Notes: generated by a model from the letters alone, not told the origin. A stretch of DNA of 64,000 bases from Blastocladiella emersonii ATCC 22665 (GCA_025594325.1 JANHCV010000015.1:682001-746000); one strand, 5' to 3'. Shown: positions 14,372-30,108, numbered from the stretch's first letter. Numbers and translations are program-made.

Positions 14372-14397
14372 TGTCGTATCCCTTAAGGGATACGACA
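14372..14397. repeat. Perfect 26-bp terminal palindrome TGTCGTATCCCTT|AAGGGATACGACA
   Basis: Read directly; it extends to 28 bp with the flanking A and T. The right-end copy at 30083-30108 has one mismatch. Confidence 0.97.
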
Positions 14398-15425
14398 TGG
14401 GCTGACCCACTGCCACTCGGGCTGACCAATTGCTTACCCCGAGCGGTTGGCAGCAGTCACTCGGGGTAACCACGTGAGACCCCGTTGCTTACCCCGGGTG
14501 GTTAATAATATGTCGGATTCAAATGTCGGATTCCCTTAGGGAACACAACACGCGGGCGGAGGCCGAAGGCCGAAGAAGGGCGGCGGCGGGCGGGGTCACG
14601 TGGGTCACGTGCAGATGAACGGCGCGTGGACACGGCTGCGAGTCGATCTGCGAGTCGATCTGCGAGACAAGTCCGAGAGCAGATCCCTGAGCCCGTCCCT
14701 GACCAACCGCTCGGGCTGACCATTGCTTACCCCGAGCGGTCGGCGGCGGCCGGCAAGCGCAGCGAGACGAAGAGCAGCGCAGCTGCGGCTACCCACTGAC
14801 AGAGTTCCCTGGTCTGGTCCCTGAGCACAGCTGCAAGTCGATCTGTTTGGTCGCGGCAATAGGCCCTTGAAGGCTCTTGGAATAATTCCACGAGAGGTCG
14901 GCGGTCAGTCCAAGAACGCAAGCAGCGACCCAGGTCGGCGACCACGGAGTCACTCCACGAGCCGGCCCACGACTTGGTCGGCGACTTGGTCGCGGCAATA
15001 GGCCCTTGAAGGCTCTCGGAATAATTCCACGAGAGGTCGGCGGTCAGTCCAAGAACGCGAGCAGCGACCCAGGTCGGCGACCAGCCCCTGAAGGCTCTCA
15101 ATGGCCGCCCTGAACTGGACCGGGTTGGAGCTCACTGGACCGGGTTCAAAGACAACCCGGTCCATGAAATTCGCTCGGGGTAAGCCATGGACCGGGTTGA
15201 CCGGGTTGACCGGGTTGTTTTAAAGTAACAGTGTAGTGAAAAGGGGGGGAGGGACCGCTCCAGTGCCACTCTTCCCCCCCTTTCAAATCCCTAAAGGTCA
15301 ATCGACCCCCTCAACCCGGTCCACCCGGTCCATGGCTTACCCCAAACGAATTTCAATCGACTTGGTCCATTGAACCCGGTCCATGGCTTACGGCGAACGG
15401 TTCAAAGGGCGGGCAACCCGGTCCA
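14372..15425. repeat. Virus left TIR (1,054 bp)
   Basis: Mirror of 29055-30108 (coordinates sum to 44480). The ORF track gives identical translations on both arms. I found 3 mismatches, at 14382, 14399 and 14462. Confidence 0.97.
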
Positions 15426-15937
15426 TGGCTTACGGCGAACGGTTCAAAGGGCGGGCGACCCGGTCCATGGCTTACGGCGAGCTGTTCAAAGTGGGCAGGG
15501 GCCCTGGTCGGGTCCACGATGGTTCTCGGCTCGCTCCACGGCCGCTGCTGCAACTGGTCGGCGACCCAAGGTCGGCAAACTGGCCGTTGAAGGCTCTTGA
15601 TGGCCGCCCCGAACTGGACCGGGTTGGAGCTCACTGGACTGGGTTCAAAGACAACCCGGTCCATGAAATTCGCTCGGGGTAAGCCATGGACTGGGTTGAC
15701 CGGGTTGACCGGGTTGTTTTAAAGTAACAGTGTAGTGAAAAGGGGGGAGGGACCGCTCCAGTGCCACTCTTCCCCCCCTTTCAAATCCCTAAAGGTCAAT
15801 CGACCCCCTCAACCCGGTCCACCCGGTCCATGGCTTACCCCGAGCGAATTTCAATCAACTTGGTCCATTGAACCCGGTCCATGGCTTATGGCGAACGGTT
15901 CAAAGGGCGGGCAACCCGGTCCAGGCTGCCGTGACCC
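15087..15937. repeat. Direct duplication (499-bp period) of the inner TIR segment on the left arm only, plus a 42-bp tandem unit (x2.5) at 15374-15480
   Basis: About 15087-15425 recurs at about 15586-15924, with differences mostly CG to TG or CA. The 42-bp unit appears as MAYGERFKGRATRS repeats in a shadow ORF. Confidence 0.9.
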
Positions 15938-16078
15938 GGTCCATGGCTTACGGCGAGCTGTTCAAAAGTGGTAGGGGCCCTGGTTGGGTCCACAATGCCG
16001 TAGTGTGTCCCGTTGCTACGTCATGCCAAGTGCGTTGAATGCGCTTGTCAATTTAAACTTTGTTGGACTACTGTAACT

Positions 16079-26505: not shown

Positions 26506-26633
26506 ATACCTTTTTGCAGTGACTAACTGCACACGTACCCAGACACGGCCAGCAGCAATAGCAATGATCGCGGCGCTTCAAAAGCACGGCCCCGCCCCCG
26601 CTCCCAGACTGCGTTTTTCCGCATCAAAGTAAA

Positions 26634-28976
26634 ATGCTTTATTCTGTGCTTAACAGTAACTACTCGGCCATGCCCCAGCTGACCAAGATCGCCAAGACCC
26701 TCGACTACACCAAGTCCATGTTCACGGACTTGCGCCAGGTCGTGCTGCATGAGTACTACAACAAGGACGTGCTCGACGGGCTCTGCGCGCGGTACTTGGG
26801 CATCGACGCCGAGGTCAAGAAGAAGCTCAAGGCCTACGCGGCGCTGGCCAAGGCGAGCTACGGCGATGGCAAGGAGACCGTGTACTCGTTCACCACACGG
26901 TCGACCTCGGTCGAGAAGAAGTTTGGCTGACTCTACGCCACGTCGCCGTCGCTCCAGAGCTTCAGCAAGGACCTCATCCGCAGCCCGCTGGCCAAGGGCG
27001 TGCTCCAGGACCTTGACATGAAGGGCGCGGCGCCGTCAATCCTCCGCGGCGTCTGCCAGCACTACAACCTTGGCCACGGCGTCTTTGACCAGTACCTCGC
27101 CAACCGCACGGCCGCGCTGGCCAAGTGGGGGCTCGGGGATAAGCAGGAGTTCCTCTCGATGCTGTTCAACGAGTTTGTCGACCGCGACGCGGTGCACCCC
27201 GAGCTCGCGGCCTTCCACCACATGCTGTACGGTTCGCTGTACAAGCTGATCGAGAAGGACTTTCCGCACGTCGTCAAGGCGTCCAAGCCTCGCGCGGACA
27301 AGACCATGAACAAGGGCTCGGTGCTCTCCAACCTGTTCCAGGCCGTCAAGTCGATCCTCCTGATGCGCGCCATTGACTTTGCCCGCGCCAACGACCTTGT
27401 GCCAAGCGTGCTTGTGTTTGACGGGTTCATGGTCAAGAAGGACGACCGCATCAACGCCAAGCTGCTCGCCAAGATGTCCGCCGACACGCTCAAGTACATG
27501 GGCTTTGAGGTGGAGTGGGACGAGAAGGAGATCACGGTGCCTGAGTCCAAGGACAAGGGCAAGCTCCCCGACTTTTGCGAGGACCCGGCCGCGTTTGTTG
27601 CCGTGCAGCTCGAGCGTGACCCGCACTACGACAACGACTGGATTGGCAAGGTCATCACCCACTACCTCAGCCGCAAGGTGGACGAGGACAAGCAGTCGTG
27701 GAAGGAGGCCGTGATCAAGTACGTGGGCGAGTTTGTCCGCAAGGACCTGGTCGGCGAGATGTACTTTCGCCGCACCGTGACTGACGCCTGGGACACCAAC
27801 GGCAAGGACAACGTGAAGAAGGCGTGCAGCACGGGGGCCATCAAGTACGCTCCACAGGTCAAGGCGCTCATCTTTGACATGCACAAGCCGCAGTGGGGGC
27901 CGTCGCACCAGAACGGCCTTGTGGTTGACTACTTTAACGCGTTCTATGGGTTTGCAGCCACGGACCTTGGCCGCGACATTGAGCCCGAGTCGATTGCCAT
28001 GTACCTCGAGTACATTCGCGACGTGGTCTGCAGCGGCAACGAGGAAGAGTACGCGTATGTCCTCAAGTGGATCCAGTGTCTGCTCACCACGGGCAAGGCC
28101 AATGGCGTGATGCTGCTGCTGACGGGTCTCGAGGGCGTGGGCAAGGGCAAGTTCTACCACCTTCTGGCCCAGTACATTATCGGCCGCAAGAACACGGTGT
28201 CCATCAGCAACGGGCTGACGTGGCTCAAGGGCGAGTTCAACTCGGAGATCGCCCACAAGATGCTCGTGCTGTTCGACGAGATGCCCTCCAGCAAGCCAGC
28301 CAAGCTCAAGAACGCGTTTGACAAGCTCAAGAGCATGGTCACCGAGGACAAGCTCATCGTCAACGAAAAGTACATGAAACGCAAGGAGGTCGAGAACGTC
28401 AACAACTTTATGATCGCGACCAACAACTGCGACGTGCTGCCACTCACCAAGACTGGTCGCCGCGAGTTCGTCCTCAAGATGTCCAACATCAAGTGCCAGG
28501 ACGAGAACTACTTTGGCGAGCTCGACGCGTTTGTCAAGGAGCACGCCGACGAGATCTTTACCTACATCCTCCGCCTCGACCTCTCGCACCTGACGCTGTC
28601 CAAGTTCCCGCGCAACCAGGCCCGCAACGACGCCATCATGGCGGCACTGGAGCCGGTTCCCGCGCTGGCCATGGACATCATGGAGTACGGCGGCTTCCCG
28701 CTCAACCTCCTGGACCACACGCGCCAGGTCGAAGTTGTGCAGGAGCTCGAGGCAGAAGCGTTCTACGAGTTTTACCGCAAGTACGCCGAGAAGCGCTTCC
28801 CTGGCCGCTCGTCCATGTCGCAGACCAAGTTCGGCGAGTACATCAAGCGCGAAGTCAACCCGGCCAACAAGCAGGAGCTCTTCGAGGTGACGCGTCGCAC
28901 CGTGAATCGCCGCAAGCTTCGCATCTACAAGTACCGCGGGCCGTACACAGTTGAGCTGTCCGACGACAAGATGTAA
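26634..28976 (+). pseudogene. TVpol (PolA-like primase-polymerase) fused to a D5-like SF3 helicase; one in-frame TGA at 26928-26930
   Basis: ORFs 26634 and 27000 share a frame. FG*LYATSPSLQSF matches the PolA GRL...P.LQ motif, with QDLDMKGAAPSIL (motif A) and LVFDG (motif C). The helicase has TGLEGVGKG (Walker A), VLFDEM (Walker B) and FMIATNN (motif C). Confidence 0.82.
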
Positions 28977-29054
28977 CGAGTCCAGAGACTCCTTTGTGAA
29001 TACAACTTTGTACCTTTTGTTTACTGTACTCGCAGCGACTGGGTCACGGCAGCC

Positions 29055-30108
29055 TGGACCGGGTTGCCCGCCCTTTGAACCGTTCGCCGTAAGCCATGGA
29101 CCGGGTTCAATGGACCAAGTCGATTGAAATTCGTTTGGGGTAAGCCATGGACCGGGTGGACCGGGTTGAGGGGGTCGATTGACCTTTAGGGATTTGAAAG
29201 GGGGGGAAGAGTGGCACTGGAGCGGTCCCTCCCCCCCTTTTCACTACACTGTTACTTTAAAACAACCCGGTCAACCCGGTCAACCCGGTCCATGGCTTAC
29301 CCCGAGCGAATTTCATGGACCGGGTTGTCTTTGAACCCGGTCCAGTGAGCTCCAACCCGGTCCAGTTCAGGGCGGCCATTGAGAGCCTTCAGGGGCTGGT
29401 CGCCGACCTGGGTCGCTGCTCGCGTTCTTGGACTGACCGCCGACCTCTCGTGGAATTATTCCGAGAGCCTTCAAGGGCCTATTGCCGCGACCAAGTCGCC
29501 GACCAAGTCGTGGGCCGGCTCGTGGAGTGACTCCGTGGTCGCCGACCTGGGTCGCTGCTTGCGTTCTTGGACTGACCGCCGACCTCTCGTGGAATTATTC
29601 CAAGAGCCTTCAAGGGCCTATTGCCGCGACCAAACAGATCGACTTGCAGCTGTGCTCAGGGACCAGACCAGGGAACTCTGTCAGTGGGTAGCCGCAGCTG
29701 CGCTGCTCTTCGTCTCGCTGCGCTTGCCGGCCGCCGCCGACCGCTCGGGGTAAGCAATGGTCAGCCCGAGCGGTTGGTCAGGGACGGGCTCAGGGATCTG
29801 CTCTCGGACTTGTCTCGCAGATCGACTCGCAGATCGACTCGCAGCCGTGTCCACGCGCCGTTCATCTGCACGTGACCCACGTGACCCCGCCCGCCGCCGC
29901 CCTTCTTCGGCCTTCGGCCTCCGCCCGCGTGTTGTGTTCCCTAAGGGAATCCGACATTTGAATCCGACATATTATTAACCACCCGGGGTAAGCAACGGGG
30001 TCTCACGTGGTTACCCCAAGTGACTGCTGCCAACCGCTCGGGGTAAGCAATTGGTCAGCCCGAGTGGCAGTGGGTCAGCCTATGTCGTATCCCTTAATGG
30101 ATACGACA
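29055..30108. repeat. Virus right TIR (1,054 bp)
   Basis: Reverse complement of 14372-15425; ends ...GGATACGACA. Confidence 0.97.

What the first reader, a model, noticed from the sequence alone, without database searches (positions are those of the whole stretch)
14372..30108. Complete PolB-less Polinton-like virus in a probable fungal genome, with rve integrase, YR and TVpol-helicase
Seen: a full virion module (MCP, penton, ATPase, fibre, small membrane-active candidates), an rve integrase, a YR and a PolA-like/SF3 helicase fusion between 1-kb TIRs. I recognised no pPolB, cysteine protease or transcription gene. Known: canonical Polintons use pPolB plus rve integrase, whereas TVpol-helicase plus YR is the Sputnik/PLV pattern. 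Inference: this combination, with palindromic ends, may define an undescribed lineage of fungal capsid-encoding DNA elements. Novelty cannot be confirmed without searches.
Basis: partly seen in the sequence, partly recalled or inferred. Interest (0 to 1): 0.92.

Follow-up and report, generated by a model that had tools for sequence, protein, structure and literature searches.

The report
Integrated polinton-like virus in Blastocladiella
This is a real, recently inserted 15.7-kb capsid-encoding virus-like element in the water mould Blastocladiella emersonii; it is a new member of the polinton-like viruses already reported in related zoosporic fungi, and these fungi also host giant viruses.

Summary
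Window 14372-30108 is a 15,737-bp element in Blastocladiella emersonii ATCC 22665. It is bounded by 1,054-nt inverted repeats (99.72% identical), TG...CA tips and a 5-bp target duplication (4/5 here, 5/5 in a sibling copy).

- **Confirmed genes:** a double jelly-roll capsid protein (AlphaFold pLDDT 88; Foldseek E 8.5e-22 to viral capsids), an A32-type packaging ATPase, a repeat-rich fibre and an rve/DDE integrase.
- **Replication protein:** its C-terminal half is a D5-like SF3 helicase. Its N-terminal core folds most like family-A polymerases and virophage replication proteins, which gives moderate support for TVpol.
- **Absent:** no pPolB and no protease.
- **Not proven:** the "YR" has suggestive residue spacing but no profile or fold evidence. 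The penton is supported only by conserved synteny.

This copy is not fully intact: two genes each carry one premature stop, whereas a sibling copy has all ORFs open.

At least 13 full-length capsid-gene loci lie on nine contigs. Related elements occur in Allomyces and in metagenomes. Integrated PLVs in Allomyces macrogynus were already noted in 2021, so this is a new member of a known kind, not an undescribed lineage.

Seen in passing: every gene carries a T-rich/TAAA promoter-like motif next to its ATG. This raises a testable virophage-like link to fungal giant viruses.

The parts
14367..14371 (.). Left copy of the 5-bp target-site duplication (ACGAA)
   Evidence: it matches the right flank ACGAC at 4 of 5 positions. 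A sibling copy has a perfect 5-bp duplication, GAAAT.
14372..15425 (.). Left terminal inverted repeat. Its first 26 nt (14372-14397) are a perfect palindrome starting TG.
   Evidence: As single-stranded DNA the tip folds into an 11-bp hairpin, -14.3 kcal/mol, z -7.4. Two other copies (L007, L008/L009) share the tip, one of them with a compensatory change on both sides.
15426..15997 (.). Left subterminal non-coding region: a ~499-nt duplication of the inner TIR, with extra copies of the 14-nt repeat GGTCCATGGCTTAC
   Evidence: (families D5, D6): 12 copies in the window, all subterminal, against 0.01 expected.
16492..16593 (-). 33-aa hydrophobic small ORF preceded by the promoter-like motif
   Evidence: Read directly from the sequence; function inferred.
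16625..17368 (-). Putative penton (minor capsid) protein, 247 aa
   Evidence: 35-36% identical to the protein in the same position, downstream of the MCP, on metagenomic relatives L003 and L004. No Pfam or PDB sequence match. Fold not modelled.
17387..17653 (-). Conserved small ORF, 88 aa, between the MCP and penton genes
   Evidence: 46% identical over 68 aa to the syntenic gene of L003. No family match.
17696..18916 (-). Major capsid protein, 406 aa, double jelly-roll
   Evidence: AlphaFold2 pLDDT 88.4, pTM 0.85. Foldseek against BFVD: 264 hits at E<=1e-3, best 8.5e-22 with TM 0.76; the hits are giant-virus, adintovirus and virophage capsid proteins. 387 sequence homologues at E<=1e-3.
18957..19754 (-). 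A32/FtsK-type genome-packaging ATPase, 265 aa
   Evidence: Pfam Pox_A32, E 1.6e-11, above the curated cut-off. 43-44% identical to the ATPases of L003 and L004.
19781..21496 (-). Large conserved-position gene of unknown function (571 aa in intact copies). Broken in this copy by one premature stop.
   Evidence: Uninterrupted 571-aa ORF in copies L007, L008 and L009. One in-frame stop and no frameshift here. Relatives carry a 550-691-aa gene in the same position but with no detectable sequence similarity.
21574..21825 (-). Conserved small ORF, 83 aa
   Evidence: 38% identical to the syntenic 87-aa gene of L003.
21846..23789 (+). Fibre-like protein, 647 aa from the first ATG, with 28-residue (84-nt) repeats
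   Evidence: Pfam Phage_Tail_Tip 3.3e-9 and PHROG tail-fibre families. 84-nt tandem repeats. Homologues in Allomyces loci L005 and L006.
23786..24898 (-). rve-family (DDE) integrase, 370 aa
   Evidence: Pfam rve 4e-6, 27.5 bits against a cut-off of 32.6. NCBIfam IS481 transposase 1.3e-18. Weak matches to retroviral integrase cores in the PDB. 30-40% identical integrases in L003-L006.
24920..26089 (-). Tyrosine-recombinase-like protein, 389 aa (identity unproven)
   Evidence: No Pfam, PHROG, NCBIfam or PDB match. Paralogues 49-93% identical in B. emersonii. Distant homologue in the same position in Allomyces (E 6e-6) and weakly in L004 (hhalign E 1.2e-3, probability 19%). Candidate catalytic residues R238, K269, R350, H373, Y382.
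26172..26505 (.). Tandem-repeat tract (6-, 13-, 27- and 11-nt units; the 11-nt unit about 12 times) between the divergent recombinase-like and replicase genes
   Evidence: The 164-aa Gly-rich 'ORF' over it is probably an artefact of the repeats.
26634..28976 (+). Replicase: N-terminal PolA-like (TVpol-type) domain fused to a D5-like SF3 helicase (750-770 aa in intact relatives). Broken in this copy by one premature stop.
   Evidence: Pfam DUF5906 4.5e-19, PHROG DNA primase 3.5e-27 and the PDB NrS-1 helicase domain 3.6e-10. Colinear with the uninterrupted 770-aa Allomyces gene. One internal stop. The N-terminal core of the Allomyces homologue folds like T7/Klenow family-A polymerases and like the Zamilon and Qinghai Lake virophage replication proteins.
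29055..30108 (.). Right terminal inverted repeat. Its last 26 nt (30083-30108) are the terminal palindrome ending CA.
30109..30113 (.). Right copy of the target-site duplication (ACGAC)

Best explanation
The region is an endogenous polinton-like virus (PLV) of the fungus Blastocladiella emersonii. It is one copy of a multi-copy family.

Shown:
- It is a discrete 15,737-bp unit with near-identical 1-kb TIRs, TG...CA tips and a 5-bp target duplication.
- It encodes a double jelly-roll capsid protein, an A32-type packaging ATPase, a fibre, an rve/DDE integrase and a polymerase-like/SF3-helicase replicase.
- It has no pPolB and no protease.

Inferred:
- Its own rve integrase inserted a linear double-stranded genome into the chromosome. 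The TG...CA tips and short duplication are the signature of this enzyme class.
- The PolA-like/helicase fusion primes and unwinds the genome. The subterminal 14-nt repeats and the terminal hairpin-forming palindromes probably serve as the binding or initiation sites.
- The ATPase packs the DNA into an MCP + penton capsid that carries fibres.

The recombinase-like gene is conserved in the lineage, but its role is unknown. The insertion is young, yet this copy carries one premature stop in the replicase gene and one in a large conserved gene. By itself it is therefore probably not fully functional, while a sibling copy 150 kb away has all ORFs open.
For: - **Host and copy number:**. Full-length 406-aa MCP genes lie at 13 or more loci on nine contigs.
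- **Boundaries:** TIRs and tips and flanks. A second full copy of 15,334 bp has 801-nt TIRs and a perfect 5-bp duplication.
- **MCP fold:**
- **ATPase, integrase, helicase, fibre:**
- **Polymerase-like domain:** the confident core (residues ~110-350, pLDDT 75-94) matches T7 DNA polymerase at probability 1.00 over ~220 columns. It also matches the Zamilon virophage 'DNA replication protein' at E 5.6e-10 and the Qinghai Lake virophage 'helicase/primase/polymerase' at 2.4e-6.
- **Same gene set and order in relatives:** Allomyces macrogynus, and largely in metagenomic contig L004.
- **No pPolB or protease:**
- **Literature frame for PLVs:**
Against: - This copy has two nonsense interruptions, so 'complete/active' does not hold for it. 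They could also be assembly errors, which I cannot tell.
- The penton fold was not tested.
- The rve Pfam score is below the curated cut-off.
- The polymerase-domain model is poor outside its core (mean pLDDT 54). It was made on the Allomyces homologue (about 49% identical to the window's protein), not on the window's protein.
- The PDB fold E-values are weak (2e-3).
- The target duplication here is 4/5, not perfect.
- No expression, particle or episome evidence exists.
Confidence: 0.85

Rival explanations
1. It is a virophage-like element. The same PLV does not express itself from host promoters. It is transcribed and replicated only when a giant virus of zoosporic fungi (Mycodnaviridae) infects the cell, as mavirus does with CroV.
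For: All ten element genes have a T-rich tract plus TAAA next to the ATG. The strict form occurs 4 times against 0.01 expected, and only in the element. The motif is kept in a diverged sibling copy and in the Allomyces element. The element has no transcription genes. Giant viruses persistently infect Blastocladiomycota, including Allomyces javanicus, which also carries this replicase. Some Mycodnaviridae contigs carry PLV-like integrases. The replicase fold is closest to virophage replicases.
Against: No giant-virus promoter from these fungi was available for comparison. The likeness to giant-virus late promoters is from my own knowledge, not a test. B. emersonii is not mentioned in the Mycodnaviridae paper's main text. 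A short AT-rich leader could also serve host RNA polymerase II. Metagenomic relatives L003 and L004 do not show the motif.
Confidence: 0.25
2. It is an autonomous provirus: a free-living PLV, like the cultured Tetraselmis PLVs, that infects the wall-less zoospore directly, integrates, and uses host transcription.
For: It carries a full virion module, a fibre, its own replicase and an integrase. At least one PLV is reported to replicate without a helper (introduction). The MCP has hundreds of environmental relatives.
Against: The strictly conserved motif next to each ATG is unusual for host genes in this window. There is no evidence of particles.
Confidence: 0.45
3. It is a capsid-less-in-practice transposon: the family now spreads only within the genome by rve-mediated transposition, and the virion genes are relics.
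For: Many copies sit in one genome. This copy is nested in a retroelement. This copy has nonsense interruptions.
Against: Capsid, ATPase, penton and fibre ORFs are open in this copy, and all ORFs are open in the sibling copy despite 5-15% nucleotide divergence between copies. This pattern points to purifying selection on the virion genes. That is an inference: dN/dS was not computed.
Confidence: 0.1
4. It is a degraded canonical Polinton/Maverick that lost pPolB and protease, or a fragment of an integrated giant virus.
For: An rve integrase, TIRs and an A32-like ATPase are shared with Polintons. The best structural MCP matches include giant-virus capsids.
Against: Sibling copies, the Allomyces elements and metagenomic relatives all lack pPolB and protease, and have the same compact gene set. 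The unit is bounded by TIRs and a target duplication at 15.7 kb. The replicase is of the virophage/PLV type.
Confidence: 0.03

Closest known systems
Integrated PLVs of Allomyces macrogynus (noted by Bellas & Sommaruga 2021, PMC7805220) and the Spizellomyces punctatus PLV group
   Same: The host is a zoosporic fungus. Both have MCP, ATPase and helicase. The Allomyces locus L006 has the same gene order (MCP-ATPase-large ORF-fibre-rve-recombinase-like-replicase), a replicase 44-48% identical and the same promoter-like motif.
   Different: The MCP is only 28% identical. It is a different genus. That paper reports no TIRs, target duplication, integrase or replicase domain analysis for Allomyces. 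I could not verify that L006 is the very element they saw.
PgVV/Sputnik-type replication module (TVpol-S3H fusion; Iyer 2008, Yutin 2015)
   Same: An N-terminal family-A-like polymerase core is fused to a D5-like SF3 helicase. The best fold matches are virophage replication proteins. It has no other polymerase.
   Different: It is paired here with an rve/DDE integrase. A 2026 survey finds DDE integrases tied to pPolB, and tyrosine recombinases tied to PolA/AEP replicases. The MCP is not of the virophage type.
Polintons/Mavericks and mavirus
   Same: Shared features are the rve integrase, long TIRs, a short target duplication, a double jelly-roll MCP, a penton, an A32-type ATPase and integration into the host genome.
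   Different: It has no pPolB and no Ulp1 protease. Its tips are TG...CA and its duplication is 5 bp.
Tlr1-type PLVs of Tetrahymena
   Same: It is a PolB-less PLV with an rve integrase and a capsid module.
   Different: Tlr1 uses a superfamily-1 helicase protein. This element uses a PolA-like/SF3 fusion.

Membership tests
Polinton-like viruses (PLV) | [quoted passage not shown] | tested here: met
   The model has pLDDT 88.4. Foldseek gives E 8.5e-22 and TM 0.76 to viral DJR capsids. 387 sequence relatives were found, none of them named.
Polinton-like viruses (PLV) | Minor capsid (penton) protein, single jelly-roll | tested here: inconclusive
   The homologue is conserved in the syntenic position in L003 and L004. 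There is no profile or PDB match.
Polinton-like viruses (PLV) | FtsK/A32-type packaging ATPase | tested here: met
   Pfam Pox_A32, 44.6 bits against a cut-off of 22.8.
Polinton-like viruses (PLV) | 15-40 kb genome with TIRs; usually no maturation protease; replicase other than, or as well as, pPolB | tested here: met
   15,737 bp with 1,054-nt TIRs. No protease hit on any ORF. The replicase is a PolA-like/S3H fusion.
Polinton/Maverick | [quoted passage not shown] | tested here: not met
   No ORF is left unaccounted for that could encode it. No PolB hit in Pfam or PHROGs.
Polinton/Maverick | Ulp1-type cysteine protease | tested here: not met
   No hit on any large or small ORF.
Polinton/Maverick | rve integrase | tested here: met
   
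rve (DDE) integrase acting on this element | Profile match to the catalytic core | tested here: met
   Pfam rve 4e-6, below the curated cut-off. NCBIfam IS481 1.3e-18 and IS30/IS3. PHROG transposases. Retroviral integrase cores in the PDB at 2e-3.
rve (DDE) integrase acting on this element | TG...CA termini and a short fixed-length target duplication | tested here: met
   TG...CA in three copies. The 5-bp duplication is 4/5 here (chance about 0.016) and 5/5 in copy L009 (chance about 0.001).
TVpol-S3H replicase | D5-like superfamily-3 helicase at the C-terminus | tested here: met
   DUF5906 4.5e-19. NrS-1 helicase domain 3.6e-10. P4-family primase C-terminal domain 1.2e-8.
TVpol-S3H replicase | N-terminal family-A-like palm and fingers polymerase core (Iyer 2008: conserved Arg hairpin, two Asp, fingers motif) | tested here: met
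   Support is moderate. The confident core of the Allomyces homologue matches T7 DNA polymerase, Klenow and DpoZ at probability 0.97-1.00 but E 2e-3 to 1.5e-2, and virophage replicases at E 6e-11 to 2e-6. Invariant Asp residues and a conserved Arg are present in alignment A5. The thumb region is low-confidence.
Tyrosine recombinase | Profile or fold match to the catalytic domain | tested here: not met
   There was no hit in Pfam (even at E<=10), PHROGs, NCBIfam or PDB, with the single sequence or with a profile. The fold was not modelled.
Tyrosine recombinase | Catalytic R-K-(H)-R-H/W-Y residues in order and spacing | tested here: inconclusive
   Candidates are R238, K269, R350, H373 and Y382. 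As I recall, the R-to-H (23) and H-to-Y (9) spacings equal those of Cre and XerD; this is a lead from memory. K269, H373 and Y382 are invariant, including in Allomyces, but the first Arg is not kept in the Allomyces protein.
Virophage (giant-virus-dependent) | Dependence on a giant virus; shared promoter with the helper | not testable with these tools
   Only a conserved promoter-like motif and host overlap with Mycodnaviridae are available.

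The most novel reading that the evidence does not exclude
The B. emersonii and Allomyces elements are the first virophage-like partners of fungal giant viruses (Mycodnaviridae). In this reading they are integrated PLVs whose genes all carry a giant-virus-type promoter, so that they switch on only in infected cells and may protect the fungal population. An rve integrase combined with a PolA-type replicase, plus a second recombinase-like gene acting on the palindromic tips, would be a new genome-maintenance scheme.
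Probability: 0.2. Interest if true: 0.85.

Novelty: new member of a known kind. Interest (0 to 1): 0.45.

Why it matters
Double-stranded DNA viruses of fungi were long thought nearly absent, and giant viruses of zoosporic fungi were only formally described in 2026. A young, multi-copy, largely intact PLV family in a laboratory model fungus, with relatives in Allomyces, gives a tractable sequence-level system. It can be used to ask whether fungi have the giant-virus/small-virus/host triangle known from protists. It also shows a gene pairing (DDE integrase with a PolA-type replicase) that a current survey finds to be unusual. Finally, it flags that the B. emersonii annotation holds many unrecognised viral genes: hypothetical proteins, merged gene models, and integrase and replicase genes that were not called.

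Tried and rejected
- **Named capsid relatives:** sequence searches for them failed. Pfam, PHROGs and PDB gave nothing for the MCP, either alone or as a profile.
- **IMG/VR scans:** Scans with single proteins found no relatives.
- **Phage genomes:** a tblastn search of the replicase hit only the helicase half.
- **Recombinase-like protein:** profile searches at permissive thresholds gave nothing.
- **571-aa gene:** its positional counterparts in Allomyces and L003 show no pairwise similarity.
- **Allomyces terminal palindrome:** none was found on the helicase side of the Allomyces locus.
- **Sample accessions:** those of the closest metagenomic relatives are not in the paper library.
- **Intron in the replicase gene:** considered and rejected. 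The Allomyces gene is an uninterrupted ORF and is colinear across the gap, so the interruption is a stop codon, not an intron.
- **Gly-rich ORF as a gene:** considered and rejected. It lies over tandem repeats.

Full report
**Source and boundaries**

The window is from Blastocladiella emersonii ATCC 22665 (GCA_025594325.1, contig JANHCV010000015.1). The capsid ORF translates exactly to a gene on that contig, and its only close relatives are hypothetical proteins of the same strain.

- The inverted arms are 14372-15425 and 29055-30108, 1,054 nt with 3 mismatches.
- The element begins TG and ends CA.
- Each tip is a 26-nt palindrome (TGTCGTATCCCTTAAGGGATACGACA, with one mismatch on the right).
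- As single-stranded DNA the tip folds into an 11-bp hairpin (-14.3 kcal/mol, z -7.4).
- The flanks read ACGAA and ACGAC.

A second full copy lies about 150 kb away on the same contig (locus L009, 15,334 bp, 801-nt TIRs). It has a perfect 5-bp duplication, GAAAT, and tips TGCCG...CGGCA. There the palindrome is kept by a change on both sides. A third copy (L007) shares the tip and ends at the same base.

TG...CA tips with a fixed short duplication are the known signature of retroviral-type DDE integrases. This is established knowledge, and Bellas & Sommaruga 2021 report 5-7-bp duplications for integrated PLVs.

**Gene content**

On the minus strand, running towards the left end:
- a 33-aa hydrophobic ORF
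- the putative penton (247 aa)
- a conserved 88-aa ORF
- the MCP (406 aa)
- the A32-type ATPase (265 aa)
- a large gene (571 aa in intact copies)
- a conserved 83-aa ORF

Then follow a fibre gene on the plus strand, the rve integrase and the recombinase-like gene on the minus strand, a tandem-repeat tract, and the replicase on the plus strand.

Evidence for each:
- **MCP.** It models confidently (pLDDT 88.4, pTM 0.85) as two jelly-rolls. It matches giant-virus, adintovirus and virophage capsid proteins in BFVD (best E 8.5e-22, TM 0.76).
- **ATPase.** It passes Pfam's cut-off.
- **Integrase.** It matches rve (below the cut-off), IS481/IS30/IS3 transposases and retroviral integrase cores.
- **Fibre.** It has 84-nt repeats and phage tail-fibre profile hits.
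- **No pPolB, protease or transcription gene.** Nothing of 150 aa or more is left unexplained, and none of the small ORFs hits a protease or a transcription protein.

**Replicase**

The C-terminal half is a D5-like SF3 helicase.

Full-length homologues of 750-770 aa, 44-48% identical, are annotated in Allomyces macrogynus and A. javanicus. The A. macrogynus gene is one uninterrupted ORF.

I modelled the N-terminal domain on an Allomyces homologue that carries the whole domain, because the window's gene is interrupted. The model is poor overall (pLDDT 54) but good in the core, residues about 110-350.
- Against the PDB, that core aligns best with T7 DNA polymerase, Klenow fragment and phage DpoZ (probability 0.97-1.00, about 220 columns, E 2e-3 to 1.5e-2).
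- Against BFVD, it aligns with the Zamilon virophage DNA replication protein (5.6e-10) and the Qinghai Lake virophage helicase/primase/polymerase (2.4e-6).

Alignment A5 shows invariant aspartates and a conserved arginine where Iyer et al. 2008 place them. I rate the TVpol reading as moderately supported.

**The 'YR'**

In its favour:
- It is conserved in B. emersonii.
- It has a distant homologue in the same position in Allomyces (E 6e-6) and a weak one in metagenomic contig L004.
- It has an ordered R238, K269, R350, H373, Y382 set. The last two spacings (23 and 9) equal those I recall for Cre and XerD. This is a lead from memory, not a test.

Against it, the first arginine is not kept in Allomyces.

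I put it at about 0.65 that it is a tyrosine recombinase. The palindromic tips (two inverted 9-11-nt arms around a short spacer) would be a natural site for such an enzyme, but that is speculation.

**Integrity**

Compared with the sibling copy, this copy has one premature stop in the replicase gene and one in the 571-aa gene, and no frameshift in any gene. All other genes are open. The sibling copy has all of them open. I cannot exclude that the two stops are assembly errors.

**Family and relatives**

- The listed members of the MCP protein clusters include full-length 406-aa MCPs at 13 or more loci on nine contigs of B. emersonii.
- Copies differ by 3-25% in nucleotide sequence, while each copy's TIRs are nearly identical.
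- Outside the genus, the closest MCP among 1.84 billion representative proteins is 38% identical. It is from an unnamed 10.7-kb assembly, and 387 proteins match at E<=1e-3.
- Contigs L003 and L004 share the block large ORF-ATPase-MCP-small ORF-penton plus an rve integrase. L004 also has a homologous polymerase-like/S3H replicase and a weak recombinase-like homologue.
- The A. macrogynus locus has the same order of MCP, ATPase, large ORF, fibre, rve, recombinase-like gene and replicase.

**Prior knowledge**

- No paper pairs Blastocladiella with Polinton or virophage.
- Bellas et al. 2023 excluded fungi from their survey.
- Bellas & Sommaruga 2021 did report MCP, ATPase and helicase genes in A. 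macrogynus as integrated viruses, and a PLV group around Spizellomyces punctatus.
- Gallot-Lavallee & Blanc 2017 listed an Allomyces 'D5 primase-helicase' as giant-virus-like. It may be this replicase.
- A 2026 preprint finds DDE integrases tied to pPolB, and tyrosine recombinases tied to PolA/AEP replicases, so the pairing here is off-trend.

Hence my verdict: a new member of a known kind.

**Promoter-like motif**

Every element gene has a T-rich tract (often TTTTGTTG) 12-20 nt upstream of the ATG, and TAAA abutting or overlapping the ATG.
- The strict pattern occurs at four gene starts, against 0.01 expected in 64 kb.
- The relaxed pattern occurs at seven distinct sites in the element and one just outside it in the flank, against 0.23 expected.
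- Long non-element ORFs lack it.
- It is kept in the sibling copy and in the Allomyces element, but not in L003 or L004.

From my own knowledge, this layout recalls late promoters of nucleocytoplasmic large DNA viruses, and virophages share promoters with their helpers. Mycodnaviridae infect Blastocladiomycota, including A. javanicus. This is the basis of the virophage-like rival, which I could not test.

1. All were from memory.
2. An earlier count gave the bounds of ORF pieces as the ORF tool listed them, which implies where the two interruptions lie.

Consensus lines printed by the alignment tool were not used.

Noticed in passing
window, immediately upstream of the ATGs at 16593, 17368, 17653, 18916, 19754, 21825, 24898, 26089 (minus strand) and 21846, 26634 (plus strand); also L009 and L006: A conserved promoter-like motif sits at the start codon of every element gene: a T-rich tract, often TTTTGTTG, then 4-16 nt, then TAAA. 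It is absent from host ORFs in the window and conserved in a diverged copy and in Allomyces.
   Followed up: partly
window 15180-15951 and 29089-29300; L009 6027-6775 and 19976-20180: There are twelve copies of the 14-nt repeat GGTCCATGGCTTAC (0.01 expected), all subterminal and in both orientations. Their numbers are unequal at the two ends, and the richer end differs between copies. They may be replicase or integrase binding sites.
   Followed up: partly
window 14372-14397 and 30083-30108; L009 5437-5462 and 20745-20770: The terminal 26-nt palindrome is kept between diverged copies by a change on both sides (TGTCG...CGACA against TGCCG...CGGCA). This fits either a hairpin or a symmetric protein site.
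   Followed up: partly
window 12700-12945 and 33394-33639; ORF 30125-32395: The PLV sits inside another repeat. A reverse-transcriptase ORF (Pfam RVT_1 1.7e-8) starts 17 nt to the right of the element, and 246-nt inverted repeats (96%) bracket the whole region. This suggests insertion into a retroelement with inverted ends.
   Followed up: no
window 1-12000 and 34000-43200: Tandem and inverted arrays of a diverged ~550-aa gene family, some members with DUF4470, lie in DNA of lower GC (0.57-0.63) than the host region at 44-64 kb (0.67-0.72). The same family flanks the sibling PLV copy.
   Followed up: no
loci L001, L002, L007-L009 (B. emersonii annotation): The public annotation calls the MCP, ATPase, fibre and recombinase-like genes as hypothetical proteins, but has no gene model for the integrase or the replicase in any copy seen. 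It also joins small ORFs to neighbours through predicted introns (303-aa and 616-aa models). No B. emersonii protein came back for the replicase query.
   Followed up: no
L007 1-2765: Copy L007 is 97% identical to the window's copy across the virion and integrase genes. It shows no similarity where the replicase should be, so it is truncated or carries a different module.
   Followed up: no
window 26172-26505: A dense tandem-repeat tract (units of 6, 13, 27 and 11 nt) fills the gap between the divergently transcribed recombinase-like and replicase genes. It may be an origin or a regulatory region.
   Followed up: no
protein clusters of P0002 and P0007: The 90%-identity clusters of the MCP also list 303-aa proteins, the length of the neighbouring penton gene model. 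I cannot explain this.
   Followed up: no
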